NCBI GenBank assembly: GCA_001949185.1
Contig: BDGG01000009.1
Span: 1 to 64,000, forward strand
Length of the DNA: 64,000 nt
Reading direction: 5' to 3'
DNA from: Ramazzottius varieornatus
Taxonomy: Eukaryota; Animalia; Tardigrada
Below, piece by piece: positions 422-53,400 of this stretch (position 1 is the first letter of the stretch; every line of letters begins with the position of its first letter). The notes under the pieces were generated by a model that ran no database searches, had not been told where the DNA came from, and saw nothing but the letters and a program-made list of their open reading frames with translations. Both the position numbers and the translations under genes were made by a program.

Positions 422-3396
422 TCAAAGAGAAGCTTCTTCAATCTCCCCTTCCCCATCTGAATCCATTTCGCCAAACTGCTGTTCACTCTTCTTGCTCCAC
501 AATGAGCCGACCGAGGCTGCGGTGGACGCGATGTCCGTCTGACTCACCAGTCCAGCGTTATCGCCTTCTCCTCTTCTGAAGACTGTATCTAACGATGCCT
601 GGAAACCTTCTGGGTCCTGTGAAGAGCTGCCAGGGACGATTTTTTCGTCGCGATTGTCCTCCTCCAAGGGTAAGCCCTGTCTTTCACGCGCTCGCTTCTC
701 GCGTTCACGCCAGTCCGCTGATCGGACACTCAGCAAACTCTTGATTTCTTCCAGCACCATCTGCGACTGCTGCTTCTGCTCCTCAAAATGATGCTGAAAA
801 AACCCAGAAAACGTACGTCTTGAAAAAATAATCTCTCCTGACAGACGCCATCGTTTTATGAAATGTGCGCTAAACAAACAGATTCGATTAAATGTATTTC
901 TCAAGCGGCGCACGTTGTCCATAATTTCGGCTGGAAACGTTACTTGGGAGGACAATCTCGCCGACATTGTTTGCCGAGCCCTCAAATGAAGAAAACTGGT
1001 CAAGTTTAGGCGAACAAAATTCAGTTTTCAAAAAGAACTTTTTTTGTGTTGCTAGAGGTCGTGCTATTGCTTGGTAAACGCAGAGGAGACTGTGAGATTT
1101 TGGACAAACACGCCATAGGACAAACTTACAAGTTCTGAGAAGACGGGTTCGCCTCGATGTTCCGCTGCGGCATCTTCCATCACCAGCGCTTCGAAGATTT
1201 CATCTTGGACATAGATGTCGTCGTCACACCGGGCCACATTCTCTACTTCCCTGTCAGCCTTGCCCGGTACCATATCCAGCTGGTTGGAAAAAGGCGCTGG
1301 ATCGTATGCTTGCAGTGACTTTCGTTTCAAGTACTGCGAGCATAAAAACTCAGACTAAGTCCACGGTGTAACCCAGAATACAAAAGTCTGTAAAAGCCCG
1401 TCTACTTACATCGAGTAGAAGTGTGCAACACTTGATGTGATAACCCAGCTTCTCCATACGATCCACCTGTGCCACTTTCTCCAGTTCGTCCTTCTCACCA
1501 TCTCCTCCTCCTTCTTCACCTGTCCCTATCAACCTCACGTCTTTCAACGCCGCGGTTAAGTGCAGCTCCAGACTCCTCAGATAATTCGGTGGACCACTGC
1601 AGTACACAAAAGCTTGATAAGACAATCAGGTAGGAAGGAAAACGAAGAAATTATTACCCTTTGACAGATTGCCTTCTTCGGTTGTCCCTCTCCTTCGCAC
1701 CTTCCGTCTCGAACTGGTATTCGGCTTCGAGTCGTCGATAACACTCGACTAGCAATTTGTGAGCTGCCTTTAGACGCTTTCTCAGAAGCCAGTCATTGAG
1801 GACGGACTCTGTGGTGGAGCGCTGAGAGCAAAGGAGCTTCAGCAGTTCAGAAGCCTGAAGGTCCAGTAATCCTATCAAGGACTTGATGGCTTGCAGGGAG
1901 AAGCCGTCGGTGGACAGTTGCAGTGCTTCGGCTTCGCTTTCAGGGATGCTAAAGCAGTCGCCAAACTCTTCTAAAGGAATGGCGCAGATGTGGTTGCTTG
2001 AAGCATCTATCGTACCCACATCTTCTGCAAGAAACAAAGTGATGACTCTGCAAGCCATCTGGTATTTTATTGAATGGCGCTTGACGTCATCGCGTAGTCT
2101 TCCGCGATGACGTCGCAGCAACAAGTTTGAGTCGACAGCTTGATTGATTGTTGAGTGTTGATTGGAGCAATAAATCCGAATTTCGGGCTTTCACAAAATT
2201 ATTTCCAATGTTACAGAAATTCGCACGTTCTTTTCAAATATTCACACAGAGAGGGGGTGAAATTGAAGTTGTATCGTATACGGTCTAGCGTACCTTTGAG
2301 CATGTCGAAGGCAGCAGCCCGAAGGACAAAGACCATGAAGCGAAACTCGACGAAGGCAGCATGGCGCAGCCGGAAGCAAGCGCGAGTCAAGCCCGTTTCT
2401 TTCTCTTCGCACTTTTCTCCAACACTGGCGAAACCACCGGTAGTCACCGCGTATCCACGCTGCAGCACTTCATTGTCGAGGATCCACCTGTTGATCTTCT
2501 GTGACAGAACCGAGCTGTTGTGGAGTACGGCCAGGAGCAGCTCGACTTGTCTCGTCAAGCTTCTTGCCAGTAGGCTCAACCCGCCCTGCATGAAGAGAAC
2601 CACGCTCATGAGTGAACAGAAGACATGCAAAACGCAAGCGTTGCTTATTAGAACAGTGAAGCGTATTACAGGGTCGTTTTATGAGCTTATGGGAGCGATT
2701 TCACCGTACCTGGACTGCGCACAAAGCGACACCACTCGCTGCCGAGACGCTCAGCGCATTTCTTCCGAGTGGTGAAGGTTTTCTGGAAAGAAGGAAGAGG
2801 CTCCCAGCAGTAGACAGTCCGAGTAGAACAGGAAGATGAAACGAAGGAGACTCGCGCGGCGAGGTAGCTATGCGATGGCGAATGGCTGTTTCGTCGTCAA
2901 ATGTTAGACGACCAGAGTTTAGAATGATCTCCTCGATGGCATCAGTCCGCTGAGGTTTCTCCATTATTTCCTCACCGTCTCCATTTCCGGAAAGTCTCGC
3001 TGATTCTCCTCCCAAAACCAGCGCAAAATAGGCCGTGAAACGCCATATCACGCTCTCCGAACTCTGGATTTCGGTCTGCAAAAAACAATGCACGCAGGAC
3101 GAGAAATCTGGGTACAGTACGAGTACAGTAAAAATTATGGTACAATGAGAATTTGTATGAGGGGGATTGCGATTGACAGCCAAATTGATCTTTCCCTTGA
3201 TTGCGACGAAACATTGATCGGGACAACCGAAAGCATCGATACACTCGACGATTGTCAAGTTATCGATTGCAGATAATTCTGTCGATAAAGCATCGAAGCA
3301 GTCTTCACTGTTCGGCTCTTCATGAAATTCTCTTGCATATCCACGAGGGACGTTCTCTTCGGTTGCAGGTGGCGGAACGTTGTTTTGGGACAACAT
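422..3396 (-). CDS. VEZT: Vezatin-like protein, multi-exon; start codon uncertain
   Basis: Exon peptides EVLQRGYAVT, RLRHAAF...AAFDML, TDGFSLQAIKSL...QASELL and YLRSLELHLTAAL resemble vezatin blocks; acidic C-terminus EQQFGE; last intron 794-1129 is GT-AG. Confidence 0.75.
870..978. repeat. Intronic dyad element (degenerate), vezatin intron 794-1129
   Basis: caagcggcgcac...ggctggaaacgttacttgg...tttgccgag. Confidence 0.65.
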
Positions 3397-3454
3397 CGCT
3401 CCGTTGAATATCTTCGTCAGACATCCACAGAAGTCTGCAAGCCAACCTGCAAGG

Positions 3455-6400
3455 ATGCAGCATCAGGAAGCGCTATCTCCTGCCGATCAGGAAAAGCTGG
3501 ACAAAAAAATATCCGAATGGCTTTCCTGGGACCAGGTATTGTAAGAGCAGCTCGTTCAACACGAGCCACGTTGACCGATTCTTGTTTTCAGTACGAGCCG
3601 ACGAGGACGGAAATTCAGAAGATGATCAACGAGAAGCGCTTTCCCGAACTCGGTGCTCGTCTTCTAACTCGCATGTCGTTTGGCACTGCCGGTGGGACAG
3701 CTCGATGTTTATGCCTGCGGTGCCACAAGGAACTATAAAGATCGTTTTTGTGTTTTTTCTCCAAGGGCTTCGAGGGAGTATGGGCCCTGGATTTGCGCAC
3801 ATGAACGACCTGGTCATCGTCCAAACCACACAAGGCCTGGTGAAATACCTACTTTCCGTGTCTGCAGGCGTCAAGAAGCAAGGCGTTGTTATCGGTTATG
3901 ATAACCGACACAACAGCGAACGGTAAGAAATATCTCATGGGCAAACGTGAGAAGTGTAAGTGCTTGAGAATGAATATTCAGCAGTTCGAAAAATTCCCAT
4001 TGTATTGGTGGCATGACGTCACATCATTGCTCTTTTGAGAAAACAATATTCTAGCATGGTATCACGATTTTAGCGATGACGTCATGCGCGTACTGTAATA
4101 GTCAAATGACCCTACCCCGCGCGTATTCGAGCGGTTCATGTAATTTCATGAATATTCATTATTAGTTTTGCAGGTTTGCTCAGTTGGCAGCTGCTGTCTT
4201 TGTCACGCATTCCATTCCAGTTGTCCTCTTTTCCAAAATTTGTCCAACGCCTTTCGTGGTATGTTTAGCCTTGTGTATCGACGTATTGTCGAGTTTCGTC
4301 ACTTGAGAACGTTTGTGCGATTATTGTAGCCGTACACCGTGCTGAAGAATGGTGCGAGTGCGGGCATCATGGTCACGGCTTCGCACAACCCAAAAGAAGA
4401 TAACGGCTACAAGGTGTACTGGGATAACGGTGCACAGATCACCTCGCCGCACGATAAGGGTATCGCTGCGGCTATTGAACAGAATTTGCAGCCGTGGGAA
4501 GGCTCGTGGAAGATCGACACGAAGAACCCTCTGGTGATAGACGAACTGGAAGTCATCCTGAAAAGCTACAAGGAAGACCTGGCAAAGATGTCGCTGTATA
4601 GGTATAGCCAACCCGAACGCTGCCCAGTCATATCTCTGTCAAAATTTAATAGTAAAGAGATGGGACAAGGTAAACGAATTCCTCCAGGTGGCTTTTGCAA
4701 GTGGCGCACGCTCCCAGGCAATAACAGATGAAGCGTGCGCCACTTGAGACATCGATCTGGATGGAATCATTTGCCGACCTTCCAGATATCAATGATCGGT
4801 TTTCCTCTCTTTTCAGAGAACTCAATGCGACGACGCCGGTGAAGTTCGTCTATACGCCGATGCATGGTGTGGGGCAGTCTTACATTATGGATTGCTTGTC
4901 GGTCTTCCGGCATAAGCCCTTCATTTCCGTCGAGGAACAGGTAGGTGCGAACGAAACTAGAAATGTTTCATACGTATCGATGAGCAGGTTAGAGCTTTTG
5001 GATACGCGAGGTATCCAACGAAACTCGTATCATTTACAGAAAAATCCCGATGGTGACTTTCCTACTGTACGATACCCAAACCCGGAAGAAGGGAAAAGCG
5101 CATTGGTGAGCGTCACTTGAGTATGTACCTGCCGTGTGTTTTCGAACTTGTTCTCCGTTTTTGCTTCGTTGGGTTTTTTATTCTATTTTCTTCGAAAGCT
5201 TGAATTTAAAGTGCGCTTCTGGTGTTTCACAGGACTTGGCTGCAGCGACAGCTAAGAGGAACAGCGCTACTGTCATCCTGGCGAACGACCCTGACGCGGA
5301 CCGGTTTGCCCTAGCCGAAAAGCAAGAGTGAGTTGATTGCTCTATGACAGCACGAGGCTCAGTTTCTGTTTGTGCTTCGTTTATTTTGTCTCTAAAAAAT
5401 CATCTCTGGCTTTGTGCGTTCTCGTTTGAAGGGAGTCATGGAAGATCTTTTCGGGCAACGAAATCGGGACCTTGTTGGGCTGGTGGATGTGGCACTGCTA
5501 CCAGCAGACAAACGAAAACAACGTCGATCGTAAGAGACACTATTATCCTGCTACCTAAAATCCGTTTTTGATGATTATGCGTGTTTGAATTTGAAGCTCT
5601 TTTTGCAGCAAAGAACTGCTACGTGATTGCCAGCACAGTTTCCTCTAAGGTTCTTCGTTCCATCGCCAACGCCGAAGGTTTCCACTTCGAAGAGACTCTG
5701 ACCGGGTTCAAGTGGATAGCCAACAGGGCAGATGTCTTGCGCAAGAGCGGCAAGACCGTCCTGTTCGGCTTTGAAGAAGCCATCGGCTTCATGTGTGGTG
5801 ACTTCGTGCTGGACAAGGATGGCGTTTCGGCCTGTCTGATCGCCGCAGAAATGATTGCGTGGCTGAATAACCAAGGCTCGACCATCCAGCAACAACTCGA
5901 TACTTTGGCCAAAAAGTAAGTCCACTGTCAAGTTTTTTCGACGTTTCACTGTGGCCGGAAGTTTTGGTTCTGCAGATATGGATATCACGTGTCGAACAAC
6001 TCGTACTTCCTTTGTCATCACCCGCCAACGATGAACGCCATGTTCCAGCGTTTGAGAAATTACGAAGGAAGTGGCACGGTGAGCTGTCTTCATTGATGAT
6101 TCAGATTTGAATCGATATGAATAAAAATCACATACTTATCAGTCATTTCCAGAGCGTCGGCAGATGAATTGATTTAGAGTGTTTTCTCAAATGGCGCAGG
6201 CTGTCGGTCAATAAAAATAAAACGATGCGGCACTTGAGGTGACGATGTGGCTGAAACCATTCTGCCGACGACCCAGTTGGCTGTTTTCCTACGATATATA
6301 TTGAAACCTAAGAAGGCCGTGCTCGGCACAAACTTAACTGGCGCTTGCATAGAAAAAGGGCGGAAAATAAAAAAAAAAAAAATAAAAAAATAAAGAAATA

Positions 6401-7002
6401 AAAAAATAAAAAATTAATAATAAAAAATAGTTTAGTTATCCAAACTCTATAGTACGTGTAGTCTTCCTACGAATGTGCCCTAGTTCGGAATGACTTCCGC
6501 TCTAAAAGACTTTGTTCGTTTGCAGTACCCGAAGACCTGCGGGAGGTTTCACGTTGAATTCGTCAGGGACCTTACGGATGGTTACGATAACGAGCAGCCT
6601 GACAACAAGCCGGTGAGGTCTGAATGTCACTGGCACGCGAACCAGTCCTCTAGTTTTTTCGGGATTGACGGTTACGTTCTGTTTCAGGTGTTGCCGACAA
6701 GCAAGTCGAGCCACATGATTACTTTCACATTCGAAGAAGGCATAGTAGCCACACTTCGCACAAGTGGCACCGAGCCGAAAATAAAATACTACACGGAAAT
6801 TTGCGGGAAGCCTGGTCAAGGGTAAGTTCGATTCGTGTCTTGTGGTCTTATGAAGTCGCAAGGTACTATACACATTTGGGGTAACGGAAATCTTTGTAGA
6901 AGTCGAGAGGAGCTCGAAAACGTTTTGGACGAGTTAGTGGCATCTTTGATAGAAGAGTATTTTCAGCCAGAGAAGAACAACTTGAAAGCAAAGTCGGACT
7001 AA
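3455..7002 (+). CDS. PGM2: Phosphoglucomutase-2 / phosphopentomutase (PGM2/PGM2L1 family), multi-exon
   Basis: Motifs FGTAGLRG, catalytic [20 protein letters not shown], metal-binding [31 protein letters not shown] across GT-AG spliced exons; ATG 3455, TAA 7000-7002. Confidence 0.95.
4667..4778. repeat. Intronic dyad element, PGM2 intron 4602-4816
   Basis: caagtggcgcac (4698-4709) N25 gtgcgccacttg (4735-4746). Confidence 0.9.
6155..6270. repeat. Intronic dyad element, PGM2 intron
   Basis: Outer arms cgtcggcaga / tctgccgacg; core caaatggcgcag N25 atgcggcacttg. Confidence 0.85.
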
Positions 7003-8400: not shown

Positions 8401-8490
8401 GAAGCGTTGGAAGCAAGACAAAAGAACCACCACTGGTGCGACCCGGAAGTCACTCACTACAGTTTCTAAATCGAATGAAAAATGCTTCTG

Positions 8491-9663
8491 TCATGAGACG
8501 TTTTCGGTTTTGTTCAGGCTGTCATTGTTCAGGCTGACTTTGCCATGGCTAATGAAGGTGGCAATCAGAACGTTGATGATGGTAACAACGAGGATGCTCA
8601 GGACAGCGATATCATCCAGCAAGGTGACCGACTGTTGTCTGCGCAAAAGTCGTTTTTGTTCCTTCTCAGCCAAGGTTTCATCGCAATCGGGTTGGGAATA
8701 CATGAGGTTCTCGCTAAGGACCTGAAGACGACGGATGACGACCAATATTACGGGCACGGCGAACTGGATGGCAATGGAGAAGGACAACATGGTCCGCACG
8801 AACTTGAAGTAAGGATGTTTCTCGAATTCGAGCAAGTTCTTCAGTTGGCTTGCGTTGGCAGTTAGCAGCGCGAAATCCAATAGTCCTGTTTAATGCACCG
8901 AAAAACAGTAGTGGGGTGAGCGCCAAATCATACACTTTCTGGAAGAGCGGCAGACGAAACGGACAAGATTCTTGTAGTGGCGCACGCCTCCAGCCAAAAA
9001 TGATGAAAACATGCGCCACTTTTGATGGTCTTGTATGTTTCTTTGCCGGCCTCGCACTTTACCATTGAAGTTGGACTGTATAAACTTACCTTGTGCCACA
9101 AACTTTCGCATCTGGTAAGTCCCTCCAATATTTCCAGTGCCAGCGGTATCCGACATCTGCTGGCGTGAAGGGGCAACAGAGACCTGTCGAGTCAGTTTCT
9201 TCGGACCCTGACAAAAGAGAGGTCGCTGCCACGCCCGAAACTTACAGTTTTTCGTGCGAAAAAAATGATTATACCTTGGGACTATTTTGGAGTCCGTGTT
9301 CAGTCTCGTGGCCGGCGATGTGGGGGTCAAGCTCGTAAGGTTGTTGTTGGGTACTTCAACGTCTGGTTTTCTTCTCAGGGTTGACTTTCTGTGCTTCGAT
9401 TTTGCGGACAAGAAGCCCACTTTTAATGGCCACATGGATGATTTGGCCGTCGCGTCGGTGTCGTCCTCTGCCATTATAAGGTTGGATGGTGTCTGATCCG
9501 AACCTTTCTCCACTTCTTCTTTGAAGCCTTCGTTCTGGATTCCATTATCAAGACGACCGGCCGGATCGGTAGAAGATGCTGGAGCGTTTTGACCTGCGTC
9601 TTGGGAAACGATGCCAGACTTGTCAGCTGAGGAGATGGAGTCTTTGCGATCGATGTCAGTCAT
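8491..9663 (-). CDS. Ninjurin family membrane protein
   Basis: Splicing intron 8886-9089 gives KFVAQGLLDFALLTANASQLK (ninjurin signature), followed by two hydrophobic segments ending IINVLIATF. Confidence 0.88.
8948..9048. repeat. Intronic dyad element, ninjurin intron 8886-9089
   Basis: agtggcgcac N25 atgcgccactt; outer arms cggcaga / tttgccg. Confidence 0.9.
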
Positions 9664-11256: not shown

Positions 11257-13198
11257 ATGGATATAGTCAAGTTCACCATAGCCTTCGACCCCCACATATT
11301 CAACTCCACGGAAGTAGACATCATAGCGGTGCAGTTCCCTTTGCTGTACCGAGTAGTGGCCACCGTGGTGCATGGAATCATTCTGCTTGGCGGAATCTGC
11401 GGTAACGTTCTGCTGACAGCCACCATCTTGCGAACCAGGTGCTTGCAAACTCCGACGTATCGCTTTCTGGTAAGTGGGGAAAAGTTGCAGAATTTTGGGT
11501 TTTGTCCTATGCCATGCTTGTACCAGCTTGGAAAACTGGTTTCACTTTCGATAGGTTTCACTAGCGGTGGCCGACTTGGTGGTATTAATCTCCGCGGTCC
11601 CCGAAGCCATGATTTCTCATCACATCGGCAAACGCTGGATTGCCGGCAAAGTGGCTTGTTCAGTCTTTGTCTTCTCCAACTTTCTAGGTATCAACGCTGG
11701 AAGCATGAGGTGCGTCTGATTAGTTTTTCTCTCGACAACCTGAATTCATCAGCGTCGCAAAAACCCTTGGCAGTATACTGTTCCTTACCCCAATCTGGAT
11801 AGTCTAGAGTCAGACAGAAAATTTCCCAAATCGTCACAATACCGCCCGTCTGCATTTTTGTAGTTTTGTTGGCTGAAAGCGTGAGCACTGCGCCATTGAG
11901 CAAAAACAATTACTGTACATTCAAGACATTTGCCGGCGTCCCTAATCGATTTTTTGGGAGATACAGTACATCAAGGCCGCCATTTATCACTTAACCCTTT
12001 ATTGATTTATCTCATTTCGCTCGCTTTAATTGACTTTCGGTTAAATCTTAAGTCTTTATCCGGTCATAGCTCTATTACAGCATTCTCGCCTTCACTGTGG
12101 AAATCTACATTGCGATATGCCGACCGCTGATCTCTCAGCGGTATTTCACCGCTCACCGCACGAACCTCTGGATCTTGGCACTGTGGCTCGTAACCCTGGT
12201 CTACTGCGCTCCGTGGCTGTATTTGACTGATGTGCGACCAGATCCGGACATACCCACCATTCAGCTATGTGACTTCCGCACATCCACCCGCCACTTTACC
12301 CGTTATTACTTCCTGGTAGACTTGGTCCTTTTTTACTTGATCCCTTTGATCGTGGCTATTGTGGTCTACACCAAGATTGGCAGTGTCTTACATCGGGCAG
12401 ATCAGGGAACGCTGATGCGCGCAACGGGGGCGGATGAAGAAAGAGCTGACAAGAGCATCGATGATACCGAGAACTCATCGTCGCTCCGCCGTCAAATCCC
12501 ACAGGACCAGATTGCTGCAGGTGCAGCACTGTCATCATCCAATTCCGTGACACCGTCGACCTGTCAGACCATCTCTCCCGAGATTAACGAAGAGGACAGG
12601 CACCAACAGCGTGACAAGAAGACTTCTCGAGACCGGGCAAAATCCAGAGCCCACGTATGTACCGTATACATGTTACCCAAGTGGCGTCGGACGTGTTGAA
12701 TGTTACTTGCTAGGAGCGTGCAGTGCTTGGACAAACGAATTACAAAGTGGCGCACGCTAGCAGCCGAAACTACCGTGAATGTGCGTTACTTGGAAAAATG
12801 AATTGGTCAAGTGTGCTTTGTGACGTGGCGCACATTTCCATTGTGATTAGCCGCAAGCGTACGCCACTTGGCAAACGACCTCGTCAATTTTGTTTGCCGA
12901 GCTCCCATAATATCGTAGTATCGAGTACGTCAGCTTTACTACTTTTTTCCAGATTCTACGCATGCTGTTCGTGATCGTCCTTCTGTTCATTATAACCTGG
13001 CTACCATATCGTGGCGTGCTGGTTTACAACACCTTCGCATCGGAGCCCTGGCTCCACCTGTGGTTTCTATTCTTTGCAAAGACCCTCATCTACTTCAACT
13101 CTGCGATGAACCCACTACTGTACTCCGCCATGAACCTCCGTTTCCGGAAGAGTCTTCATCGAACAATAACTTGTCGACCACCATTTGATGATCGTTAG
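11257..13198 (+). CDS. Class A GPCR, thyrotropin-releasing-hormone-receptor-like
   Basis: GNVLL (TM1), TPTYRFLVSLAVADL, LGINAGSMSILAFTVEIYIAICRP, YCAPW, DLVLFYLIPL, WLPYR, NSAMNPLLY; four exons (approx. 11257-11469, 11554-11709, 12081-12654, 12953-13198). Confidence 0.85.
12677..12901. repeat. Tandem array of three dyad units, TRHR-like intron
   Basis: Cores at 12678 (degenerate), 12745 (N25) and 12825 (N25); closing tttgccgag arm. Confidence 0.85.
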
Positions 13199-14454: not shown

Positions 14455-14566
14455 TTAGTAAATGGACTGAGAATAACGAACATTCGTCAGTGGCGCACAT
14501 TCTCATTGTTACTAACAAAAAAATTGCGCCACTTGGAAACGCGATTCTGCTCGAGTTTTTGCCGAC
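14455..14566. repeat. Dyad element upstream of the orphan GPCR ATG (probable 5'UTR intron 14433-14584)
   Basis: agtggcgcac N25 ttgcgccacttgg ... ttgccgac. Confidence 0.85.
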
Positions 14567-14638
14567 TTCCCACTCAATCAACAGTCTTTCTGAACTTCAC
14601 CGGACAAAACATTGTTTCCCCGTTTGCTCACTTCTCAA

Positions 14639-15963
14639 ATGAGTATCAACGGCTCCGAAGCCGATTTCTTCTTACACAATGTACCTGCTGATTTGTTGGA
14701 AGGATGGTCCATCTTTTCCTGGATGTTGTTGTCAGGTGGAGCCATTTTGAATGGCTTCAACCTGTTTGTCCTACTTCTTCACTGCTGCCGGTTCAGGTTC
14801 AGTCCGACGAGAAATCAGCTGTTGATCCTGTTTATCCACGACCTCCTCCTCTCGGCGTTTTTCTATCCGGCTATCGTTGAGAACCTTGCCCACGGCAACC
14901 ACGGTGTATGGAACAATGTAGAACTCTGCCAGGTCTTCGGTTTCTGCAATATTTTCTGCTCCATTCACACCACCTTTTTGGGGGCACAGATCGCCCTTTT
15001 CCGGGCTTTCATGTCTTCGCAAAACTATAGCAGTAACCACGTCTTGGAACAAAAACAGAGAATGGCCGTCAGAATTATGACCTCGACAACATCCGTGATA
15101 GGCCTGCTGACGGCCAGTATACCTTTCGTGTTCCCCGATGAGATGGAAATAAAGCCACCGTATGGGTTTTGCGGACCGAACACTCACCAATACGGAAAAG
15201 GCATTCAGATTGTCAAGATGGTATTTCACTGTTACAACATTCGCAATTTGGAACGCGCGCAAAATGATATCACCCAGTTCATGTTCCAAGTGGCGCACGT
15301 TCACACGGTTACTGCCTGGTTCCGTGCGCCACTTAGGGAAACGATCTGGATGAATTCATTTGCCCCAGTCTATATTGTGTTCTCAAGAAGTTTCAACCCT
15401 GTACCATTACAGGTTTTGTGGGTGTTTATCCCTTCAACGATCGCGTTGATCAGCTACCTGAAAATCTACCTGGACTTGAACAGACGACGCAACGCTTTTC
15501 AAGACCCAAGTCCCGGTCAGAGCTTACAGGATGAGAGAAGGCTTACGGCGTCTTTTAATGCTTCCTATCAGTGTCTAGGAAGCGAAGGGACCGTTACGCT
15601 GAACCTGTCGACTTCCAACCGTAACTACGACAGGAACTGCAACCGGGCAGGAAACCGCCTGAGGAGACTGTCTAGGAAGATGCTGGCTTTGCTTCTTACA
15701 AAGCTAATAGCGCACATGCCCATGGCGCTCTTCTACATCTTGACTACGAGGGAGAACCGCGACCCCATCCTGAACTTGGTTGTTTTGTCGCTGAATTTCG
15801 CGTCCACGTTATTTCACCCGGTATGTTTGTGAAAGTAAGATACGCCCGTGTAATCTTCCCTGATTATAAACGGTGGTTTTCGCGATTGCAGATTGTGTAT
15901 GGGATGATCAATTCACAGATGAGGGAGCCCTACCGCAATGTTATCGGCATGTTTTGCAGATAA
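14639..15963 (+). CDS. Divergent orphan class A GPCR
   Basis: Seven hydrophobic segments, TM2 Asp (IHDLL), Cys at the top of TM3 (LCQVFG), TM5 FIP..SY.KIY, HPIVYG; introns 15221-15412 and 15821-15891. Confidence 0.75.
15257..15365. repeat. Intronic dyad element, GPCR intron 15221-15412
   Basis: caagtggcgcac (15287-15298) N25 gtgcgccactt. Confidence 0.9.
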
Positions 15964-35694: not shown

Positions 35695-35806
35695 TCCAGA
35701 AACAATTTTGGGATGATCGTCATCTGAAGTGGCGCACGTTTCCAGCCAACCTCAAAGAAAACTGGGCTACTTGAGATAACGATTGTCTTCAGACTGTTTG
35801 CCGGCC
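35695..35806. repeat. Dyad element between cyclin L and XK-like gene (possible 5'UTR intron)
   Basis: aagtggcgcac N24 ctgggctacttg ... tgtttgccgg. Confidence 0.7.
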
Positions 35807-36385: not shown

Positions 36386-39133
36386 ATGAACCTGACCTTG
36401 CAGTCTTTCCTTCATCGTCATTTTCCTCGTCTTTCCAAACCTCCTTCCAAAGACATGGTTTATCGACCTATCGTTCTGCAATGCGGAGCGAAGGGTAAAA
36501 CTGCGAGATGCACGACGTTAAAGACTTGGCTGGTCTGTTGGCCCGACCACTGCGACCCGAGCTACATGGTGATTTTTTGGACAGTCTTTAGCTTCGGCTT
36601 CTTTCTGGCCGATATGGCATCGGATATTTCTGTTGCCTTCGAGTACCTTGAGTCGAAAGACTATATCTGGTCGGGATTACTCTTTGGCTTTACCATTCTT
36701 CCTTGTATCATTGCCCAAGGATATTTTGTTGCGGTGAAAAAGGCACCGTGGTATGAAGCTTATCCGTTCGGCGTCATTTTCTGGTAAGAGAAAATTCACA
36801 CTTGAAATGATACTGCAAAACATGAAGCTTCTAAATTATTCTGCCAGTATTTTGAAAAATCCACGCTTCGAAAGGTGACACTAATACTGTCAAAAAGTCG
36901 AATAAAATTTAGCATCTCGGTGTATTTCGTTCCAGGTCCTGGAGAACAGTTCAGACTTTTCTTGCCTTGCCTCCCAACGAGGCCATTAAATCTGCCCCCG
37001 ACGCCGCGAACTTCCTCCACAAGCTCCGTGAATTCCAAGCCTGCAATCGTCAGCGTACCAACGTCAGTGACCTTGACGTCTACTTCGGTTCAATGCCCCA
37101 ACTAATCCTCCAAAGCTACATTGCCGCCGACGTGGCTGTCACCACCGGCGCGTACAAGATCACCTGGAACAGCTGGCTCTCACTGGCCCTGTCTTCCCTC
37201 AACATGCTACGCTACGAGCCCAGTGCCCGCGAAAGCGAGAAGGGGATCATCGTTGATGTAGAGACCGTCCTTGAACCCGCCATGTACGACTACATCGCGG
37301 AGAACCTGTTCGACCTGATGAGTGTGGTACCACGCGCGGTGACCATCGGATGCTTCCTGTCCATTCAGCCTTCCTACGTCGCTCTTTTGTCTTTCTTCCC
37401 ACCACACATCCTGGTGGGGTTTCTGTGGTTCTGGCTGTCGTCCCCGAAGAAGATACCAGGTTACAGGTCGCATGATAGAGACTTTCGTGGGCAGAGAAGA
37501 GACCGACACGATTACCTCGCTCACTTCCAAGCAGCTTTGGCCACCTTGCTCTTCCCGCCGACCAACAAAGCCTGGCCAGAGAACTTCCTTCTCTGGAGAG
37601 ATCGTTTCAGGGCAGTCGCGACGAAGCAGTTCGTCGTGGTAACAGTTTTTCAGTTCTTGGAGACGGAAGCGCTGCTGTGGATATGGGTGTTCCTGGCCGA
37701 TGCAAACGTACCGGTACTTCCAACGCTGTTGGCTGTAACCGGCTGGACCGTCCTTCGAATCCTCTGTCATGTTGGGTATTACGTATTTCTGCTCTTTCCG
37801 TTGTATACCTGCGAGTGGGAGCAATGCACGAGAAGAAGAGGTAAACGAGACTCAGAAAAATTCAGAAAATTATTACTGTCCGCCGTGACGTCATCGCGGC
37901 CATTAAAAACAAAACAAGCGGTCCAGGGTCACCTCGAAGCTCGGCAAACAGGCTTCACGAATCATTTTCCGGAGTGGCGCACGATTTTGATGCTGTTGGC
38001 TGGAAGCCTGCGCCACTTGAGTAGACGATCTTGCCGAGTTTGTTTTGTCTCCCAAGTAGTGGGCGTTTAATGATTTGCTGATGTGTTCGCGTGCGCCTCT
38101 TGGAAAAAAGATGTTGTTTTGTTTGCCAGACCCCACTTATTGACAGATTTACCTAAATTATTGCCGGTTTCAGGTCTGATTGCCAAGATGGAGATAACCC
38201 GAATGGCAGAAGAACTTGGTGGCTATTTCTGCCCCAAGCTGAAGCCACGCTTGGTGAAAACCCGCGATCTATGCTCGTCCAAGTCGGACATTTCCTCGTT
38301 GCGTCAAGAGTGCCAATGGCTGGTTGACCATCTGCTGTCCGAGTCCGTAGGCCATACGAAGCGTAGTCGAACACAAAAACATCGCTTGAAAGCCATGAGT
38401 GCCTCAGAGAAGGATCTCTTGCGGTCTGTTCGTCGAGAAGCAGCGAACTGTCTGCGCTCGTTGGACAATCGCCGGCCTTTGTCCACTTCAGACATGCATG
38501 CTTGGCAGCGCTTGATCGATGATTGCCAAGGTGAACCTTGTGCTCAGTTTTCAATTAATGGACAGCCAATATTTCATGCGTCACAGGAATGTCGACAAGC
38601 GAAACGTAAAAGATCTTCGTCTCAAGTGGCTCACTTTTCGTTGCTCTTGGCTGGAAAACTGCGCCCTTAACATAATCATCTTGTACGTTTCGCTGGTCGT
38701 TCTCCCAGTAGATGTTTGCATAGAAAAACTGAGTTCAAAACGACTCAACCGAGCACGATTCTACTGCAGATTCTATTTTTTTTGTAAGGACTGTTTTCTC
38801 TTAGAGTTGTCCAACGGATGGCTGGACATTCTCTTCCGCTGTCTGACACATCATCGTCTTCCCTCGTCTTTCCTTCACGCCGACCGGGATCTCTCCCTGT
38901 CCCAATATCCCGAAATGTTCCAGCAGATGGTTGTCAAGAACAGTTTCCACCTGAAGAACTCTTCGGTTGTTAAACGTCCAGAAAAGAGCAAGAAGACTGT
39001 TCAGGACTCCGTTACAAACCAGGAAGCTCCACAAGGAAGACCGTCGTCCACGATATTGATCTTAGAGAACCCAGTGGAAGCTGCAGATGACCCGTTGTCT
39101 TTCGGACATGATTTAGATTTCGAATATGTTTAA
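36386..39133 (+). CDS. XK-related (Xkr scramblase-like) multi-pass membrane protein with a soluble C-terminal extension
   Basis: FFLADMASDISVAFEY...WSGLLFGFTILP and DVYFGSMPQLILQSY resemble XK motifs; introns 37841-38173 and 38531-38804 keep frame. Confidence 0.7.
37940..38050. repeat. Intronic dyad element, XK-like intron 37841-38173
   Basis: agtggcgcac N25 ctgcgccacttg. Confidence 0.88.
38593..38699. repeat. Intronic dyad element, XK-like intron 38531-38804
   Basis: Outer arms cgacaagcgaaacgta / tacgtttcgctggtcg; core caagtggctcac N24 ctgcgccctt. Confidence 0.85.
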
Positions 39134-39424: not shown

Positions 39425-41601
39425 TCAGTGACACTTTTCGAGATTTGAGGCGGAGGTAGACTGAAACATCGTGGTGAAAGGCCATTTTCGGGTGAAGGGC
39501 CATTCGTACTCGTTGGGCACGACACGGTAGACGTCGGCCTCGAAGAAGGCGTACAGCGGAAAGTACAGATTGGTCTTCCGCGGGTGCCGACGTACAATAT
39601 CGGTGTTGGCTAAGGTGTGATAATACAAAAAGAGGCGGGACGAAATGTAGAAGGCGATGAACACGTCGATTGAGTAATGCTAGATACAAAGGCAACCAGA
39701 ATGATTTCTGTACAATAAGTGGGAGGTCGGCAAACGAAACGTGAAGTATCGTTATGTTGAGTGGCGCACGCTTAAAGCCGAAAGCAACGATAATATGCGC
39801 CACTTCGGACAGCGATCTTACACGTTTCGTTTACCGATTTCCTGATTTATCTGAAATTTTTCGGAGATTGACCAAGCTTCGATCTGAAGTTTCTATAATG
39901 CAGACTTTTTACCTCGTGAGCGGCAAGGATGAAGAACATGCCGAAGAGATTCAACGTCCAAGAAGCCAAATGGATCATCCGATGTCTCTTCGGGGTATCT
40001 GAAATAAAAATAAATATTCAGTTACGTACTTGAGAAAGTGAGATCTAACAAGAAAACGGCCAAGTTCATCTGTGCGTACATTCTGTGATGAAGAAATTCA
40101 GAGTGGTAATGATAACTGTGTGACCTGAGAACATGTAGTCACCACAAGCTCGAACACCTTGCAGCGACATTCCAAAGCCTCGAACTATGGTCAAGGCTTG
40201 TCGAAACCTCGCTGCGGGATCACCGAAAATCTAAAAACAATACAGGCCGGTAAATTATGAAAAGGATATTAAAAGGATAAGGAAACTTTGTACCTTGCCA
40301 GAGCACTTCAGGTGAACCCCGGGGACTGACATGGAAGTTATCAGCATGCAGACACTTCGTAGGAGGAAGATAGAGCCCAGAAGGACGAAGTAGCGTCGCA
40401 TGAGGATAAACCTATAAAGAAGAAGTATGTGAGACCGCTGCAACTACCGGAAGGTTGAACTGACACACCTGTGCTTGTGGAGGACCAGAATGGCGAACCA
40501 GAACAGGCAGAGCAAGATGGTGGCAACTTCACACATGTCAAAGGCCCACGGTATGAGCGGGACGTTGTCCAGAATCAAGTCCGGCAATGGAGGGTACTTT
40601 TCCATGTCGGGAACCCGATCATGAACGATGACCATCACGAAAGCAGTTATGACTGTCGACGAGACGAAGTACCTACGAGAAACCCAATAGGAAAGTTAAC
40701 TACCGGATCAACCCACGCAAGATAGCAGGGAACTGAAATGCGCAAGCGCGTCAATCACTAAAACACCCTGGTCAAGTGGCGGATAATGACGGTGAAAGAC
40801 CACACAGCTCGCGCCACTAAAACGGGGTAGTAACTCAAGCCGATGAGTTGACGCAGAGTCGCAGACTATCGTGTTAATCAACAGCAGTAGTGCGTCAGTT
40901 AGACCAAGTCAAACTGCATGACACATCCGATGACGTCGCACGAGTGATCACTATACAGTAGGATCTACAGCACCTTCCTCAATCACTTATTTAATTTCTG
41001 ATCTTATGAATGATGGTTGATAGCTCTTATCTTACGCAAAAGCGAGGATGGCTTTCCCAAAGTCAGGTTTCAATGGAGGTAGGTGTCTGTGTTGTGAATG
41101 CGAGGTGAAACCATGTGTCATGGCCGAGACGCTACTCAGCCTCCTCTTCCTTCGTTCCCTCTTCTCCCGTAGTGCCTCCTCCGTTTCAGTTTCCGAGCCC
41201 GAAGAAGAAGAGGACGACGACGACGCTTGGCTGATATTTTCAGCCGCCAACACTGCGAAGTTGGCTGTGACAGGGTCATTGACGGCCTTGCTCCCCCCGT
41301 TGGTATCTTCAGCCACGGGCAAACCAGGTTTCGAGATGTCCACCTTGGCAATGGTGGTCGACTTCAGCACGGAGATGGCACCATATAAACGCTTGATCAC
41401 TCCCAATTTCCTGATGGAGAGGGGAGGCGAACGAAAATCAGTTTCCGTCATGCGGAGGAGGGAGAAGCCATCGATTTCGTGCTCCCGGAATAACTCCCGC
41501 ACGTCCAACGCGACGCCATTCAGTTCCAGCCATCTTGAGACGTCTTCTATCGTCCATGAAGCTACCGTTACATCCCGTAGATTCGCTGGAACCCGATCCA
41601 T
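39425..41601 (-). CDS. SAMD8: Sphingomyelin synthase-related protein (SMSr, CPE synthase) with N-terminal SAM domain
   Basis: SAM domain ([10 protein letters not shown]...HEIDGFSLL...KLG), [24 protein letters not shown]; Glu in AHEHY is the SMSr type. Confidence 0.93.
39727..39837. repeat. Intronic dyad element, SAMD8 intron 39680-39912
   Basis: Outer arms tcggcaaacgaaacgtg / cacgtttcgtttaccga; core agtggcgcac N25 atgcgccactt. Confidence 0.9.
40748..40854. repeat. Degenerate dyad element, SAMD8 intron
   Basis: caagtggcggat N24 tcgcgccact; outer arms gcgtcaa / ttgacgc. Confidence 0.55.
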
Positions 41602-42185
41602 GATGGTCACCTACAAGACAAGTTACACATATTATAACTCACAGAAACTTTCCTTGAGCAGTAGAAACTAGAATTAACTGGAATACAAATTGAGGTTGGT
41701 TGAATGTTTTGGCCCAATCAACCATCTGTAGGACTTTCAATCAATCGTAGCAGGATGCGTGACCCAGTTACTGTACGTCACGAGTACCTCATCACGCGAT
41801 GTGACTGCTCACCTGCTTATATGCGCTACGAACAAATGACTGCTGCTGCCGCCCATTTCGCTACACAGCAAAGAGCCAGCAGAGCTGGACACGGGGGAGC
41901 TGCAGATGCCTGATGCTACTGTCTGATACTAATTTTCTTTCCTCAACCTGTTGCTTCAACCGAGACCTCTCCTTGATCCTCTGCTGCCCACTCTTATTGC
42001 CGGAAGATGGAAGAAGGGATTGAGAAAAGATTTCTTCGGAACATAGAGCGATCAAGAAGCTGGCTGGATCCGGACAGAGCCTAACAAAGCGAGTCAGCGA
42101 AATTTTTGATTAGTTTGAACCGATTCACTTCTTCCATTCGGGCAGAGAGATTCCGGCGAATGTCACTGAGAACGTGCTCACTAGG

Positions 42186-42300
42186 GAGCTCGGTAGAAGA
42201 AGACAACCATGTATCTAAAGTGGTGCACGGTGTCAATCAGTACCACTGCAAAAGTGTGCCACTTGAGCAAGCAATCTGGTCAAGTAGGTTCGCCGAGCTT
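42186..42300. repeat. Dyad element upstream of the SAMD8 CDS
   Basis: Outer arms agctcgg / ccgagct; core aagtggtgcac N25 gtgtgccactt. Confidence 0.85.
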
Positions 42301-43622: not shown

Positions 43623-43748
43623 TATGGGAGACCGGCAAACGAACGTACAAGATCGTTATTATTAGCGCACGCGCTCAGCGTATAACAATGAAAACATGCG
43701 CCACCTGAACCTTCCATCTTGCACATTTCGTTTGCCTACCGCCCATAT
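43622..43748. repeat. Dyad element, apparently intergenic or UTR
   Basis: Outer arms atatggg..ggcaaacgaa / ttcgtttgcc..cccatat; core gcgcac N25 atgcgccac. Confidence 0.8.
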
Positions 43749-47364: not shown

Positions 47365-47578
47365 TACTGTACTCCCGCGATACACACGCCATACTCGTAC
47401 GTACGTCAGGAATGTGCACCTCCCGGGGGCAGAAAATTTGAACTTTATTGAATCAATAATCAGTCGAAAAGCTGTACTCTAAAGAGGAATCTTCCGCCAC
47501 TTCGTCACTTTTTTACTTGCAGTACTACTTTTCCTAATACAGAGGGAAGTATGGCGTGTGTATCGCGGGAGTACAGTA
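47365..47578. mobile_element. MITE (214 bp) with a 31-bp perfect TIR and TA ends
   Basis: tactgtactcccgcgatacacacgccatact / agtatggcgtgtgtatcgcgggagtacagta. Confidence 0.85.
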
Positions 47579-50490: not shown

Positions 50491-53400
50491 TCACACTTCC
50501 GTGTGTATCTTTGGCGAAGATTGTCCAGGCTTTGATTCCGTCTCAACAGACTTCATTTCCACATCACCGTCGGCTGAGCTAACTTTCTCGTCGTTCTTCG
50601 CCTGGCCGTCGATGGGCTTCACTGGGATCACTATCCGATGGTGTCCAGTTCCCGAGGTAGACTGCGCTGTGCCGCTGGTGAATACGGCGGGGATATTTTT
50701 TTTCTTCTCCGACTTCTTCTCCGACTTCTTCTCCTCCTTCTTTTCTTCCTTCGTTGCATTATTTTCGGTCTTCCTCGGCGATGCATCTCTCTGTTTTGAG
50801 TCGTCAGACTTTGCCGAAACGCTATCCGAAGCCGAACCTTTCGTTTCGAGGAGGCTGACTAGTTCGTGCACCCTCTTCACCGACCGCTTCCTTGCGTTTC
50901 TCACTTCTTCAACCCCATCAGTCGGTATCAGATCGAGCTTCAGTATGGCCTGCGTTAATAGCTCATCCAGTAACTTGTACTCGTAGTCGCCTTTGGAGCC
51001 TTGGAAATCGTTGATTCTCTTCTCCAGCTCTTTAACGTGCTCGTTGATTTCTTCAATCTTTTCTAAAGGCGTCCTGGGCTTTGGTGGTGGAGCCGATGTG
51101 GCTTCTGAACGTGGGACTGGTGCTGAAGCGGAGCGCGGTGCGTCAGGTTCGCCTTTGACAACGATGGGTACTCGGTGCTGCTTGCCTTCACCGTCGGCTG
51201 AACTGGCGCCTTTACCTGGAGACGACTGTTTCGTAGGTTCAGGACCAGTTGGCGCGGAAGCTGGTCGAGTAAAACCCATAGGAATAGGCTCTGAAGGATC
51301 ACGCTTGGGGATGTAACCCATCGGTATTGGTTCGGTAGACTTCTGTGCTGCTTGAGGTTTAGGCTGAGTTTGAGGCTGGCCTGCAAAGTAAAAATCGGCC
51401 TTAGGAAACGCACAATGAATTCAATATTACATCGGATTTCGGAGTTCGACTGGGAGGCCGGCGCAGGCGTCCACACAATGCCAACGACAAAGTGCGCCAC
51501 TTGAGTCCAAGAGGCTGCACGTCTGGGTGGCGGGCGTCCCAATTGGGCTCCGCGCTTGAAAATTTGACAGTCAGTGCAAGCACGAAGAGAGAGTCTGGAC
51601 CAAGGGAAAACGAAGGCAACGTAAAGTTTAACCGTCGAAAATTGTCGAGAGTTGCCTGAAACTAACTGTACTTTCCGACAATCTTCTACGGCTGAGTCTT
51701 ACGGTGCCCCCTTTTTCACTTGGTCCAGACATTCTCTTCCTGCGTGTGCTGTATGAAATAGACTGCAGGCTGACCCCTGCTCAGGCTGTGGTGAACTTAC
51801 TGTTGTTGCTCTTTTGGTGTTCGACTTTGATAGGGATAGGTATATCTTTCGATCGTGAAGGAAATTCCCGGCCAACTGACCCTCCACGAAGGTCACGGTT
51901 AAATGAGTGGAAGTTTCTGGGGAGTGTTGACGAGAAGGTGGAAGACGTCTCCGTTGGGCTTCCAGAAGAAGTAGTGTTAGCGTCGATACCGCTGTCTGAA
52001 CTGTTGGAGGGGATGACGCGGCTACTGGGTCTCGGTTTGGGTGGAACAGGCGGCGGTGCAGCTGGCTGTGGTGAGTGAGGTCGCGCAAAGTCAGGTTGTG
52101 ATGAAGGGCGAAAGTTCGAACCGGACGGTGGAGGAACTGAACGCGGGATGGCGCCCTTGCTCTGCCGCATTAAATTCTCGTCATAGTCGGGGATGGGCGA
52201 AGCCGGTTTCTCGCTTGTGGGAGATTGCTGAATGTTGATGGGAATGTTCCGTACGTAGGAACTACGCTCGTCTTCTTTGGGTATCTTGAAGCGGCGTTCG
52301 TGAAAAGCGTCCTCCATGTCCCGGTTTTCGAACTACAGTGGAAGAAATCGAAAATTACTACATGTAATGGTTTTTGGAGTATTGTATGCACAGTGTGTAC
52401 TTCATCAAGGTTTCGAATTATATTACTGTAAATTTCACATTTTAACTGTGGGTGAAATCGGGATTGTCTTCACGTAGATTCCGACTCACGTAATTTGTTA
52501 TCGATTTTTTTTGCGATGCGGTTGCCGCATACTTCCCCTGGAATGTATTATCATCAGCTGTTTAATATGCAAGACTTGATGTTGAGCCGTGAGTCACGTC
52601 TGAGCAATGTTAATGGAGGCAATAATGTCGTGTAAAATTACTCAAGTGCTCTTCGAACGCTTACAAGCCGCGTCAGCATTACATTGAGCAAATCCACACC
52701 ACTGAAGCCTCGTCTTTCTGCCCGATTTTTTCAGCCACATTTTCAAAAAAATATTCTGGTCGAAAAAAAAACCCGAGTCATACTGCTGACCCGAGTCAAG
52801 CCGAGTCATACTGCTGACCAGCTGTTTCACAAACTAATTTGATGGGGGCGAGAGGCTCGGGGACAGTCTGGTCTGATGTTGAGTGACGTTATACGGATGC
52901 GGTCAGTCTAGCGTAACATCACACTTCCTGGTTGCTGTCGTATTTTTTTCTTCTCCACCATTAATGCAGATGCGCTGCTTTTTCTCTCACGCTTCATCGA
53001 CATCGAAGGATGCTTCTGCGCAGTACCTCGAACTGTTCGGCTCAACACTGTCAACAGTAGCCGAATAGCTATGGGCATATGTTGTTGTGTGGGACTGTAT
53101 ACTTTTATTGCTGCTTGCTGTGGATAACAAAGTTGCTTCCGTCTAACTTAGGCGTGTGTGACCAAATTTCACCAACCACTCTATGGCCCATGGCAATGCA
53201 AACAGCATAACAGCTTTCCGCAGCTCGTAATATGCTTTGCTTCTCGTCAACCAACACAAACTTTCGGCGTAAACAGCAGAGGCTTCAACGCGCCCGGGGT
53301 CGCCCTTTCTTTGACCTTGCCATGTATTACCATATCGATTCTGTGTACCGTATTGAGGACAGACATGACTATACTGTAGCGCAGTATTGGCTCACCCATC

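What the first reader, a model, noticed from the sequence alone, without database searches (positions are those of the whole stretch)
870..51505. Pervasive intronic dyad element CAAGTGGCGCAC-N25-GTGCGCCACTTG with fixed spacer length
Seen: about 34 units at about 28 loci. Each has two inverted 12-bp cores inside looser outer arms (CGGCAAAC...AAGAT... / ...ATCT...GTTTGCCG), ~110-120 bp in total. They lie in introns of about a dozen unrelated genes (VEZT, PGM2, ninjurin, two GPCRs, SCFD1, ZF, ENKD1, cyclin L, XK-like, SAMD8, BAG) and none is in an exon. By hand count the spacer is exactly 25 bp in 22 units, 24 bp in 6, and 21 or 27 bp in one each, while the spacer sequence is highly divergent (only a weak TTGGCTGGAA trace). 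No consistent TSD is visible, unlike the ordinary MITEs in this window. Inference: conserved cores and spacing with a decayed spacer fit selection on geometry better than neutral MITE decay. Candidates are a site for a dimeric DNA-binding protein or recombinase, a nucleosome-scale chromatin element, or a structural splicing aid, possibly a domesticated transposon end. I know of no function for it and cannot check whether it has been described.
Basis: partly seen in the sequence, partly recalled or inferred. Interest (0 to 1): 0.93.

Follow-up and report, generated by a model that had tools for sequence, protein, structure and literature searches.

The report
Old tardigrade mini-transposon with protected boxes
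The repeated "dyad" is the middle of a very old, very abundant 123-bp palindromic miniature DNA transposon of the tardigrade Ramazzottius varieornatus. It is an ordinary kind of element, except that two inverted 10-bp boxes in it have decayed about three times more slowly than the rest, so thousands of copies may be kept as protein-binding sites.

Summary
A profile search finds 34 units at about 28 places in the window. The genome (R. varieornatus, 55.8 Mb) holds 1,111 dyads with both 10-mers exact and roughly 13,000 units in all.

Each unit is a 123-bp near-perfect palindrome, a foldback MITE. It has a consensus that occurs in two orientations and is itself an 8-bp inner stem plus a 9-nt loop. 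It has diverged as much as the arms (about 30%).

No two copies are more than about 84% alike, so the family is old and dead.

The unusual part holds up. The block AAGTGGCGCA is 91% identical to the consensus, against 65-72% everywhere else, including the terminal nucleotides. A search blind to the core gives the same result. Three separate clocks (arm against arm, TSD decay, termini) put insertion-age divergence at 0.23-0.30. The boxes therefore seem to be constrained after insertion. The pattern fits recognition of the DNA sequence by a protein, not an RNA hairpin.

Spacer length is only weakly protected (81% against 65% unchanged, p = 0.03).

Other follow-ups in this scan reached the same view on other windows of this genome.

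The parts
875..981 (+). MITE unit, full length, TSD AAAT/AAAT
   Evidence: nhmmer 64 bits; flanks
4667..4778 (-). MITE unit, both cores exact, TSD ATCT/ATCT
   Evidence: folds as hairpin z -4.8
6156..6266 (-). MITE unit
8943..9047 (-). MITE unit
11852..11941 (+). partial, decayed unit
   Evidence: 20 bits
12673..12739 (+). partial unit at the head of an array
12729..12817 (-). array unit 1 (dimer 12729-12906)
12796..12906 (+). array unit 2, intact right terminus
14489..14570 (+). unit lacking a recognisable left arm
15261..15369 (+). MITE unit inside the 192-nt intron 15221-15412 of GPCR gene RvY_13411; the splice sites lie outside the unit
16622..16739 (+). MITE unit
18361..18472 (+). MITE unit
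21845..21956 (-). array unit 1 (dimer 21845-22059), left core decayed, insertion in spacer
21949..22052 (-). array unit 2
22518..22594 (+). array unit 1 (dimer 22518-22696), spacer 24
22590..22696 (+). array unit 2; begins at GGCAAAC directly after the previous right core
23005..23115 (+). MITE unit
23473..23554 (-). MITE unit, spacer 24, ends truncated
24035..24131 (-). MITE unit with an internal deletion that removes part of one arm and core
26013..26095 (+). array unit 1 (dimer 26013-26205)
26094..26205 (+). array unit 2, both 9-mers exact
30377..30465 (-). array unit 1 (dimer 30377-30560)
30464..30560 (+). array unit 2, spacer 27
32230..32334 (-). MITE unit
32575..32671 (-). MITE unit, spacer 24
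33353..33467 (+). MITE unit, spacer 21 (4-nt deletion)
35700..35804 (-). MITE unit, spacer 24
37940..38045 (+). MITE unit in intron 37843-38172 of XK-related gene RvY_13420
38088..38133 (+). half unit (right core and arm) in the same intron
38594..38704 (+). MITE unit overlapping the annotated 3' end of the RvY_13420 coding sequence (last exon 38173-38667)
39722..39837 (-). MITE unit of the arm subfamily CGAAACGT
   Evidence: hairpin z -6.0
42185..42297 (-). MITE unit
43626..43738 (-). MITE unit, TSD ATAT/ATAT
51460..51506 (-). copy with left arm and left core deleted; the remaining core is exact

Best explanation
The units are copies of one ancient, now immobile family of non-autonomous cut-and-paste DNA transposons (a foldback MITE) in Ramazzottius varieornatus.

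Anatomy. Each copy is a 123-bp palindrome. It runs from the terminal motif GGGAG(C/G)TCGGCAAAC through a 22-bp mid-arm, the box CAAGTGGCGCAC, an 8-bp inner stem and a 9-nt loop, and then the mirror image of all of these. It is flanked by a 4-bp TSD of the form A-N-N-T.

History. The family spread to about 10^4 copies long ago, mostly into short introns and other non-coding DNA, and has since diverged about 25-30% per site.

The boxes. The two inverted 10-bp blocks AAGTGGCGCA have diverged only about 9%. They sit 37 bp apart, counted from the start of one 12-bp core to the start of the other. The blocks have sharp edges, both copies are equally protected, and the stem around them has decayed.

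Reading (inference). The boxes were the element's internal protein-recognition sites, probably an inner transposase-binding site. After insertion they have been held by purifying selection as sequence-specific DNA-binding sites for a protein that is still present, possibly one derived from the transposase. The binding protein and the cellular role are not identified.
For: Shown:
- Palindrome, two loop orientations and consensus.
- The TSD is 4 bp. Flanks read A (31/42) N N T (30/42) on the left and A (32/42) N N T (27/42) on the right. Perfect duplications occur in 8/42 against 3.7% in permutations (p = 0.0002), and only length 4 is significant (z = 3.3).
- Abundance.
- No close pairs: the best non-self identity for three query copies is 80%, 78% and 84%.
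- Box identity is 0.91, against 0.65-0.72 elsewhere, 0.68 for the terminal 5 nt and 0.68 for G/C sites outside the box.
- A core-blind profile finds no additional copies and gives box divergence 0.097 against 0.257 for the rest.
- Genome-wide counts agree: 1,111 loci keep 20 exact core bases, but only 7 matches counting both strands (about 6 distinct loci) keep 23 exact terminal bases.
- Clocks for the time since insertion: arm-against-arm mismatch 0.23-0.29 outside the box against 0.09-0.12 inside it; ML divergence of the TSD 0.30 (95% CI 0.24-0.35), where a value of 0.10 is worse by 38.7 log-likelihood units, in copies whose boxes show 0.09; terminal nucleotides 0.32.
- CpG observed/expected is 1.01, so methylation decay is not a factor.
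- Only weak subfamily linkage: sum of r2 60.3 against 51.6 in permutations.
- G.T and A.C mismatches are symmetric and not concordant within copies. Compensated double changes in the box are at chance level. Both argue for DNA-level rather than RNA-level recognition.
Against: - No binding protein, autonomous partner or orthologous comparison could be obtained. Selection is therefore inferred from rate differences alone.
- The TSD clock rests on 42 copies and assumes that their boundaries are correctly placed.
- The arm clock assumes that copies were near-perfect palindromes when they inserted.
- Box mismatches do not correlate with non-core divergence (rho 0.04) or between the two boxes of a copy (rho -0.15). 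This fits a single burst but gives no positive support for dyad-level function.
- Cores that have lost their partner are often still intact.
- The motif is not enriched outside the family, so no independent host use is visible.
- Spacing is only weakly protected.
- A sequence-specific low mutation rate cannot be separated from selection without polymorphism data.
Confidence: 0.55

Rival explanations
1. Ordinary neutral MITE decay. The boxes are better kept only because every copy that went on transposing needed them (selection among transposon lineages). Nothing constrains them once a copy is in place.
For: - Arm subfamilies exist that differ symmetrically in the mid-arm but share the boxes, GGCAAAC and the termini. 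So source elements did conserve the boxes while other parts drifted.
- Box mismatch counts are unimodal and close to binomial.
- Cores that have lost their partner are still intact.
Against: - This model needs the last insertion to be about three times younger than the family. Yet the TSDs (0.30, CI 0.24-0.35), the terminal nucleotides (0.32) and the arm-against-arm mismatch (0.23-0.29) all show the same age as the non-core consensus divergence.
- The termini, which any DDE transposon needs, are not protected.
- Subfamily linkage explains little of the variation.
- No copy pair exceeds about 84% identity.
Confidence: 0.25
2. The boxes mutate more slowly rather than being selected, for example through a sequence-context effect or shielding by a bound protein in the germ line.
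For: - The rate difference is uniform over all copies and both boxes and independent of the partner box. A property of the sequence itself would look like this.
Against: - Other G/C-rich parts of the same element, such as the terminal GGGAGCTCGGC, decay at the full rate. G/C sites outside the box have identity 0.68, against 0.92 inside.
- CpG observed/expected is 1.0.
- A threefold drop over exactly ten adjacent sites with sharp edges is not a known context effect (my knowledge).
Confidence: 0.1
3. An RNA-level role in introns: the palindrome folds in the pre-mRNA and helps splicing of the lengthened intron, or it is a hairpin substrate for a double-stranded-RNA protein.
For: - Copies still fold as hairpins, with the boxes as the main stem (z -2 to -6).
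- Verified copies lie in short introns.
- The consensus inner stem has two positions that would be G.U on one strand.
Against: - Outside the boxes only 54-61% of stem positions still pair.
- G.T-type and A.C-type mismatches are equally frequent (490 against 492) and show no per-copy strand concordance (P = 0.2).
- There is no excess of compensated pairs in the boxes.
- There is no Rfam match.
- Loop orientation looks random along the window.
Confidence: 0.05
4. An introner: the element creates its own intron when it lands in an exon.
For: - The introns that hold it consist mostly of the element: 126 of 192 nt in RvY_13411.
- The consensus is almost free of stop codons.
Against: - In both introns examined the GT and AG lie 26-94 nt outside the element, in ordinary flanking intron sequence. 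The element ends carry no fixed splice signal.
- The TSD is A-N-N-T, not AG/GT-like.
Confidence: 0.02

Closest known systems
MITEs / foldback-type non-autonomous DNA transposons (class II TIR elements)
   Same: Small size, long inverted arms, TSD, high copy number, no coding capacity, residence in and near genes, occasional dimers.
   Different: The best-conserved part is an internal 10-bp block in each arm, not the termini. No autonomous partner was found. The family is not described in the papers searched.
Sola superfamily (DDD transposase, 4-bp TSD; PMC10741241)
   Same: 4-bp TSD that is not TTAA-specific. An earlier follow-up in this scan called the family 'Sola1-type'.
   Different: Only the TSD length links them. 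No Sola transposase or matching autonomous element was examined here.
Kolobok and piggyBac (TTAA-specific 4-bp TSD; Kolobok termini RR..YY, PMC9587614)
   Same: 4-bp TSD. Termini GG..CC fit RR..YY.
   Different: The TSD is A-N-N-T (AAAT, ATAT, ATTT, ATCT). TTAA was not seen in 42 copies.
Transposon-borne transcription-factor or insulator sites kept by the host (for example CTCF sites spread by SINE B2; conserved cores of MIR and CORE-SINEs) (my knowledge)
   Same: A short internal motif of a dispersed repeat that outlasts the rest of the element in thousands of copies.
   Different: Here the carrier is a DNA transposon, the motif is an inverted pair at fixed distance, and no binding factor is known. 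Resemblance to the CTCF core is limited to GTGGCGC and lacks the upstream CCA..AG part (comparison from memory, not a test).
Introner elements (MITE-like intron creators)
   Same: Short DNA-transposon copies that make up most of the length of many introns.
   Different: Splice sites are not supplied by the element or its TSD in the introns checked.

Membership tests
MITE (non-autonomous TIR DNA transposon) | Terminal inverted repeats | tested here: met
   The whole unit is a palindrome. The termini are GGGAG(C/G)TCGGCAAAC and its reverse complement.
MITE (non-autonomous TIR DNA transposon) | Target-site duplication of fixed length | tested here: met
   4 bp, A-N-N-T. Perfect in 8/42 against 3.7% expected, p = 0.0002. 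Only k = 4 is significant.
MITE (non-autonomous TIR DNA transposon) | Short, non-coding, high copy number | tested here: met
   123 bp and about 13,000 units.
MITE (non-autonomous TIR DNA transposon) | Autonomous partner with the same termini | not testable with these tools
   No longer element with these termini occurs in the 357 kb held.
Sola superfamily | 4-bp TSD | tested here: met
Sola superfamily | Sola DDD transposase mobilising the same termini | not tested
Kolobok / piggyBac | TTAA-specific TSD | tested here: not met
   The flanks are A-N-N-T. TTAA is absent from 42 copies.
Introner element | Element or TSD supplies the splice sites; the intron is co-extensive with the element | tested here: not met
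   The donor at 15221 and the acceptor at 15412 lie 26 and 40 nt outside the unit. Intron 37843-38172 has 94 nt before the unit. Only two introns were tested.
Structured RNA family (Rfam) | Match to a curated covariance model, or covariation that supports the helix | tested here: not met
   No Rfam match in the window. Compensated changes are at chance level in the boxes. Mismatches are strand-symmetric.
CTCF-type insulator site | Match to the full CTCF core motif and binding by CTCF | tested here: inconclusive
   Only a by-eye comparison with the motif recalled from memory: GTGGCGC fits, the upstream half does not. The presence of CTCF in tardigrades is inferred from PMC5094011. No binding data exist.

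The most novel reading that the evidence does not exclude
About 10^4 transposon-seeded inverted box pairs (AAGTGGCGCA, 37 bp apart from core start to core start) are bound by a still-unknown sequence-specific protein and are held by purifying selection across the compact genome of an extremotolerant tardigrade. The protein might be a domesticated transposase or an architectural factor. That would be a lineage-specific cis-element network of roughly one site per one to two genes.
Probability: 0.35. Interest if true: 0.8.

Novelty: new variant of a known kind. Interest (0 to 1): 0.55.

Why it matters
If the boxes really are selected in place, R. varieornatus carries thousands of identical paired protein-binding sites delivered by one transposon burst. 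That would make it a compact and tractable case for how mobile DNA wires a genome-wide binding network, in an animal studied for chromatin protection. The claim can be tested directly by footprinting, DNA pull-down and comparison with sister species.

If the boxes are not selected, this is simply the dominant old MITE of this genome. It should still be masked and annotated. It makes up about 3% of the DNA and inflates many short introns. Because it is nearly free of stop codons, open reading frames and gene models run through it.

Tried and rejected
- Introner idea: rejected for the two introns checked.
- RNA hairpin or splicing aid: no strand asymmetry, no covariation, stems decayed; no Rfam family.
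- CpG or methylation decay as the cause of rate differences: CpG observed/expected is 1.01.
- G/C content as protection: other G/C-rich parts decay fully.
- Ascertainment bias: a core-blind profile gives the same result.
- Arm-to-arm correction (palindrome repair): compensated double changes in the boxes are at chance level.
- Host motif used outside the family: 30 hits with up to 1 mismatch, against 18.7 +/- 9.2 for letter-permuted motifs.
- Relatives in metagenomes: first scan 0 hits; second scan 2 hits with no arm similarity, taken as chance.
- Literature: no paper describes the motif or a tardigrade MITE of this kind.
- Autonomous partner: none in the 357 kb held.
- Solo-core test of dyad dependence: too noisy to use.
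The H. exemplaris orthologue (P0003) and a protein 90% identical from a public read-set assembly (P0002) could therefore not be followed to DNA.
- Intron/exon/intergenic split: not done for lack of annotation.

Full report
**Observation**

The dyad is real and far above chance. The exact 9-mer pair with an 18-32 nt gap occurs 3 times in the window and never in shuffles. The 12-mer with up to 2 mismatches occurs 57 times, against 4.6 expected. Pairing cores with up to 3 mismatches gives 22 dyads, with spacers of 25 (16), 24 (4), 27 (1) and 21 (1).

An nhmmer profile was built from window copies, iterated, and reduced to one strand per locus. It finds 34 units at about 28 places between 875 and 51506.

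The genome has 55.84 Mb in 200 contigs. It is Ramazzottius varieornatus: two window genes are 100% identical to RvY_13420 and to the exons of RvY_13411.

Genome-wide, 1,111 loci carry both 10-mers exactly, against 0 for the reversed control. A systematic sample of twenty 10-kb stretches holds 47 units. That gives about 13,000 units in the genome (bootstrap 95% CI 7,000-21,500). The window is about twice as dense.

The assembly gap at 34369-34418 touches no unit. It lies inside an unrelated inverted repeat. Whether the sequence is continuous across it cannot be told here, and nothing below depends on it.

**Anatomy**

Aligning full-length copies with their flanks shows a 123-bp near-perfect palindrome. 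In order it contains:
- the terminal motif GGGAG(C/G)TCGGCAAAC;
- a 22-bp mid-arm;
- the box CAAGTGGCGCAC;
- the mirror image of these three on the other side.

This is why it looked random by eye. It is an 8-bp continuation of the stem around a 9-nt loop. Its per-site identity is 0.68-0.70, the same as the arms.

Copies still fold as hairpins, z -2 to -6. There is no Rfam match.

**Target-site duplication**

I used 42 copies whose terminal 7 nt are ungapped and match at 5 or more of 7 positions on both sides.
- The left flank reads A (31/42) N N T (30/42). The right flank reads A (32/42) N N T (27/42).
- The four bases are identical on both sides in 8 of 42 copies, against 3.7% in permutations (p = 0.0002).
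- Scanning lengths 1-10, only 4 bp is significant (z = 3.3, p = 0.001).

A 4-bp TSD that is not TTAA excludes piggyBac and Kolobok. It is compatible with Sola (PMC10741241, PMC9587614). The superfamily was not otherwise tested.

**Age**

Three different copies were used as genome-wide queries. Their best non-self matches reach only 80%, 78% and 84% identity. The family therefore has no young members.

**The unusual feature**

In 202 arms from copies that were not chosen by similarity, the block AAGTGGCGCA is 0.91 identical to the consensus and has sharp edges (0.73 and 0.78 at the two neighbouring positions). For comparison:
- mid-arm 0.71;
- positions 7-16 0.72;
- terminal five nucleotides 0.68;
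- inner stem 0.65;
- G/C sites outside the block 0.68, against 0.92 inside it.

This is not an artefact of how copies were found. A profile whose core columns were randomised finds 125 copies, all of them already known. It gives block divergence 0.097 against 0.257 for the rest.

Genome-wide counts agree. Twenty exact core bases survive at 1,111 loci. Twenty-three exact terminal bases give only 7 matches counting both strands, or about 6 distinct loci.

CpG observed/expected is 1.01, so methylation-driven decay is not involved.

**Is the difference older or younger than insertion?**

If the boxes were conserved only among source elements, the last insertion would have to be about three times younger than the family. 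Three clocks that do not depend on the family consensus say otherwise.
1. Mismatch between the two arms of the same copy gives 0.23-0.29 per site outside the boxes and 0.09-0.12 inside them.
2. A maximum-likelihood fit to the TSD pairs gives 0.30 (95% CI 0.24-0.35). A value of 0.10 is worse by 38.7 log-likelihood units. In those same copies the boxes show 0.09.
3. The terminal nucleotides, which any cut-and-paste element needs, are at 0.32.

Linkage between variant columns is significant but small (sum of r2 60.3 against 51.6 +/- 1.0). It is concentrated in the mid-arms, where a few subfamilies co-vary symmetrically.

The simplest reading is a burst from a few sources, then about 0.25-0.30 substitutions per site everywhere except in the boxes.

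Caveats:
- The TSD set is small and depends on correct boundaries.
- The arm clock assumes that copies were near-perfect palindromes at insertion.
- Box mismatches do not correlate with non-core divergence or between the two boxes. A single burst would give this, but it adds no positive evidence.

**DNA or RNA?**

Outside the boxes only 54-61% of stem positions still pair. G.T-type and A.C-type mismatches are equal (490 against 492) and not concordant within copies (P = 0.2). Compensated double changes in the boxes are at chance level.

A ten-base block with sharp edges, conserved as sequence on both arms, fits a protein footprint on DNA better than a helix requirement. The motif is not enriched outside the family. 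Any binding factor would therefore be specific to these transposon-derived sites.

**Spacing**

Spacer length is unchanged in 64 of 79 copies (81%). Equally long mid-arm segments are unchanged in 49 of 75 (65%) (Fisher p = 0.03). That is about 0.008 against 0.019 length-changing events per nucleotide. This is a modest effect, and part of it may reflect length differences between arm subfamilies.

**Gene context**

Only spot checks were possible.
- In RvY_13411 the unit at 15261-15369 sits in a 192-nt intron (15221-15412). Its GT and AG lie 26 and 40 nt outside the unit. A homologue at 48% identity (P0005) lacks the corresponding residues.
- In RvY_13420 the units at 37940 and 38088 lie in intron 37843-38172. 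The unit at 38594-38704 overlaps the last ~25 codons and the stop of the annotated protein.

So the element landed in existing short introns and is not an introner. "None in an exon" is not strictly true against the public gene model. Intron enrichment per non-coding base was not tested.

**Arrays**

The five dimers in the window share one layout: terminus, arm, dyad, arm starting at GGCAAAC, dyad, arm, terminus. The junction falls where the right arm begins with GG(G/A)AAAC, which is nearly the same as GGCAAAC. Slippage or unequal exchange at this short direct repeat would produce the 73-80 bp period. This is inference. Loop orientations within dimers are sometimes opposite, so simple duplication does not explain every case.

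**Comparison with what is known**

This is a MITE by every feature that could be tested. The autonomous partner was not found. Neither the motif nor a tardigrade MITE of this kind appears in the papers searched.

The nearest known parallel for the protected boxes is the retention of transposon-borne factor-binding sites, such as the conserved cores of MIR-type SINEs or CTCF sites spread by SINEs. That comparison rests on my own knowledge.

Four earlier follow-ups in this scan, on other windows of this genome, reached the same view: an old MITE of about 12-13 thousand copies, with a 4-bp TSD noted in one of them and boxes decaying 2-5 times more slowly. I read them after my own tests. They are not independent evidence.

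No read data, sister-species DNA or larger copy sample could therefore be used.

**Verdict**

The element is an ordinary kind of thing, an ancient foldback MITE with a 4-bp TSD, with one feature that is not ordinary: paired 10-bp boxes that seem to be constrained after insertion. I put about 0.55 on constraint as DNA-level protein-binding sites and 0.25 on purely source-level conservation. The rest is split between low mutability and RNA-level roles.

Noticed in passing
family consensus; window ORFs 14612-15832, 36967-38070, 22596-23216, 8890-9669: The element consensus has no stop codon on the loop-defined plus strand and only two on the other strand, against about 10.8 expected from shuffles. 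Long open frames therefore run straight through copies and their introns.
   Followed up: partly
window 38594-38704 and 38173-38667: The annotated XK-related protein RvY_13420 takes its last ~25 residues and its stop codon from inside a MITE unit. Either the element supplies the C-terminus or the gene model reads through.
   Followed up: partly
window 15221-15412: The single intron of GPCR gene RvY_13411 is 192 nt, a multiple of three, and free of stops. About 126 nt of it is the MITE. A homologue at 48% identity (P0005) lacks the corresponding residues.
   Followed up: partly
window 12729-12906, 21845-22059, 22518-22696, 26013-26205, 30377-30560: Dimers of the unit joined where GGCAAAC meets the similar start of the right arm. 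This suggests slippage or unequal exchange at a 7-bp direct repeat. Loop orientations within a dimer can differ.
   Followed up: partly
window 32229, 39721 (left flanks); 33468, 32343 (right flanks): The TSD is often AAGT or its complement ACTT, so TSD plus terminus reads AAGTGGG. This resembles the internal box AAGTGGC and may reflect a single DNA-binding specificity.
   Followed up: no
window 63542-63675, 55866-56069, 47365-47578, 43121-43270, 51572-51751, 34336-34505: Several other short inverted-repeat elements unrelated to this family, some with perfect 23-31 nt arms. One of them brackets the assembly gap at 34369-34418.
   Followed up: no
P0002: A 278-aa protein from an assembly of a public read set (Logan) is 90% identical to RvY_13420. 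DNA of a close relative therefore exists in public data and could serve for the orthologous-copy test.
   Followed up: no
L006 (G000 contig 2, 500001-510000): 14 units in 10 kb, while five other 10-kb samples have none. The family is strongly clustered along the chromosomes.
   Followed up: no
window 57182-57231: A second 50-N assembly gap, outside the finding's range.
   Followed up: no
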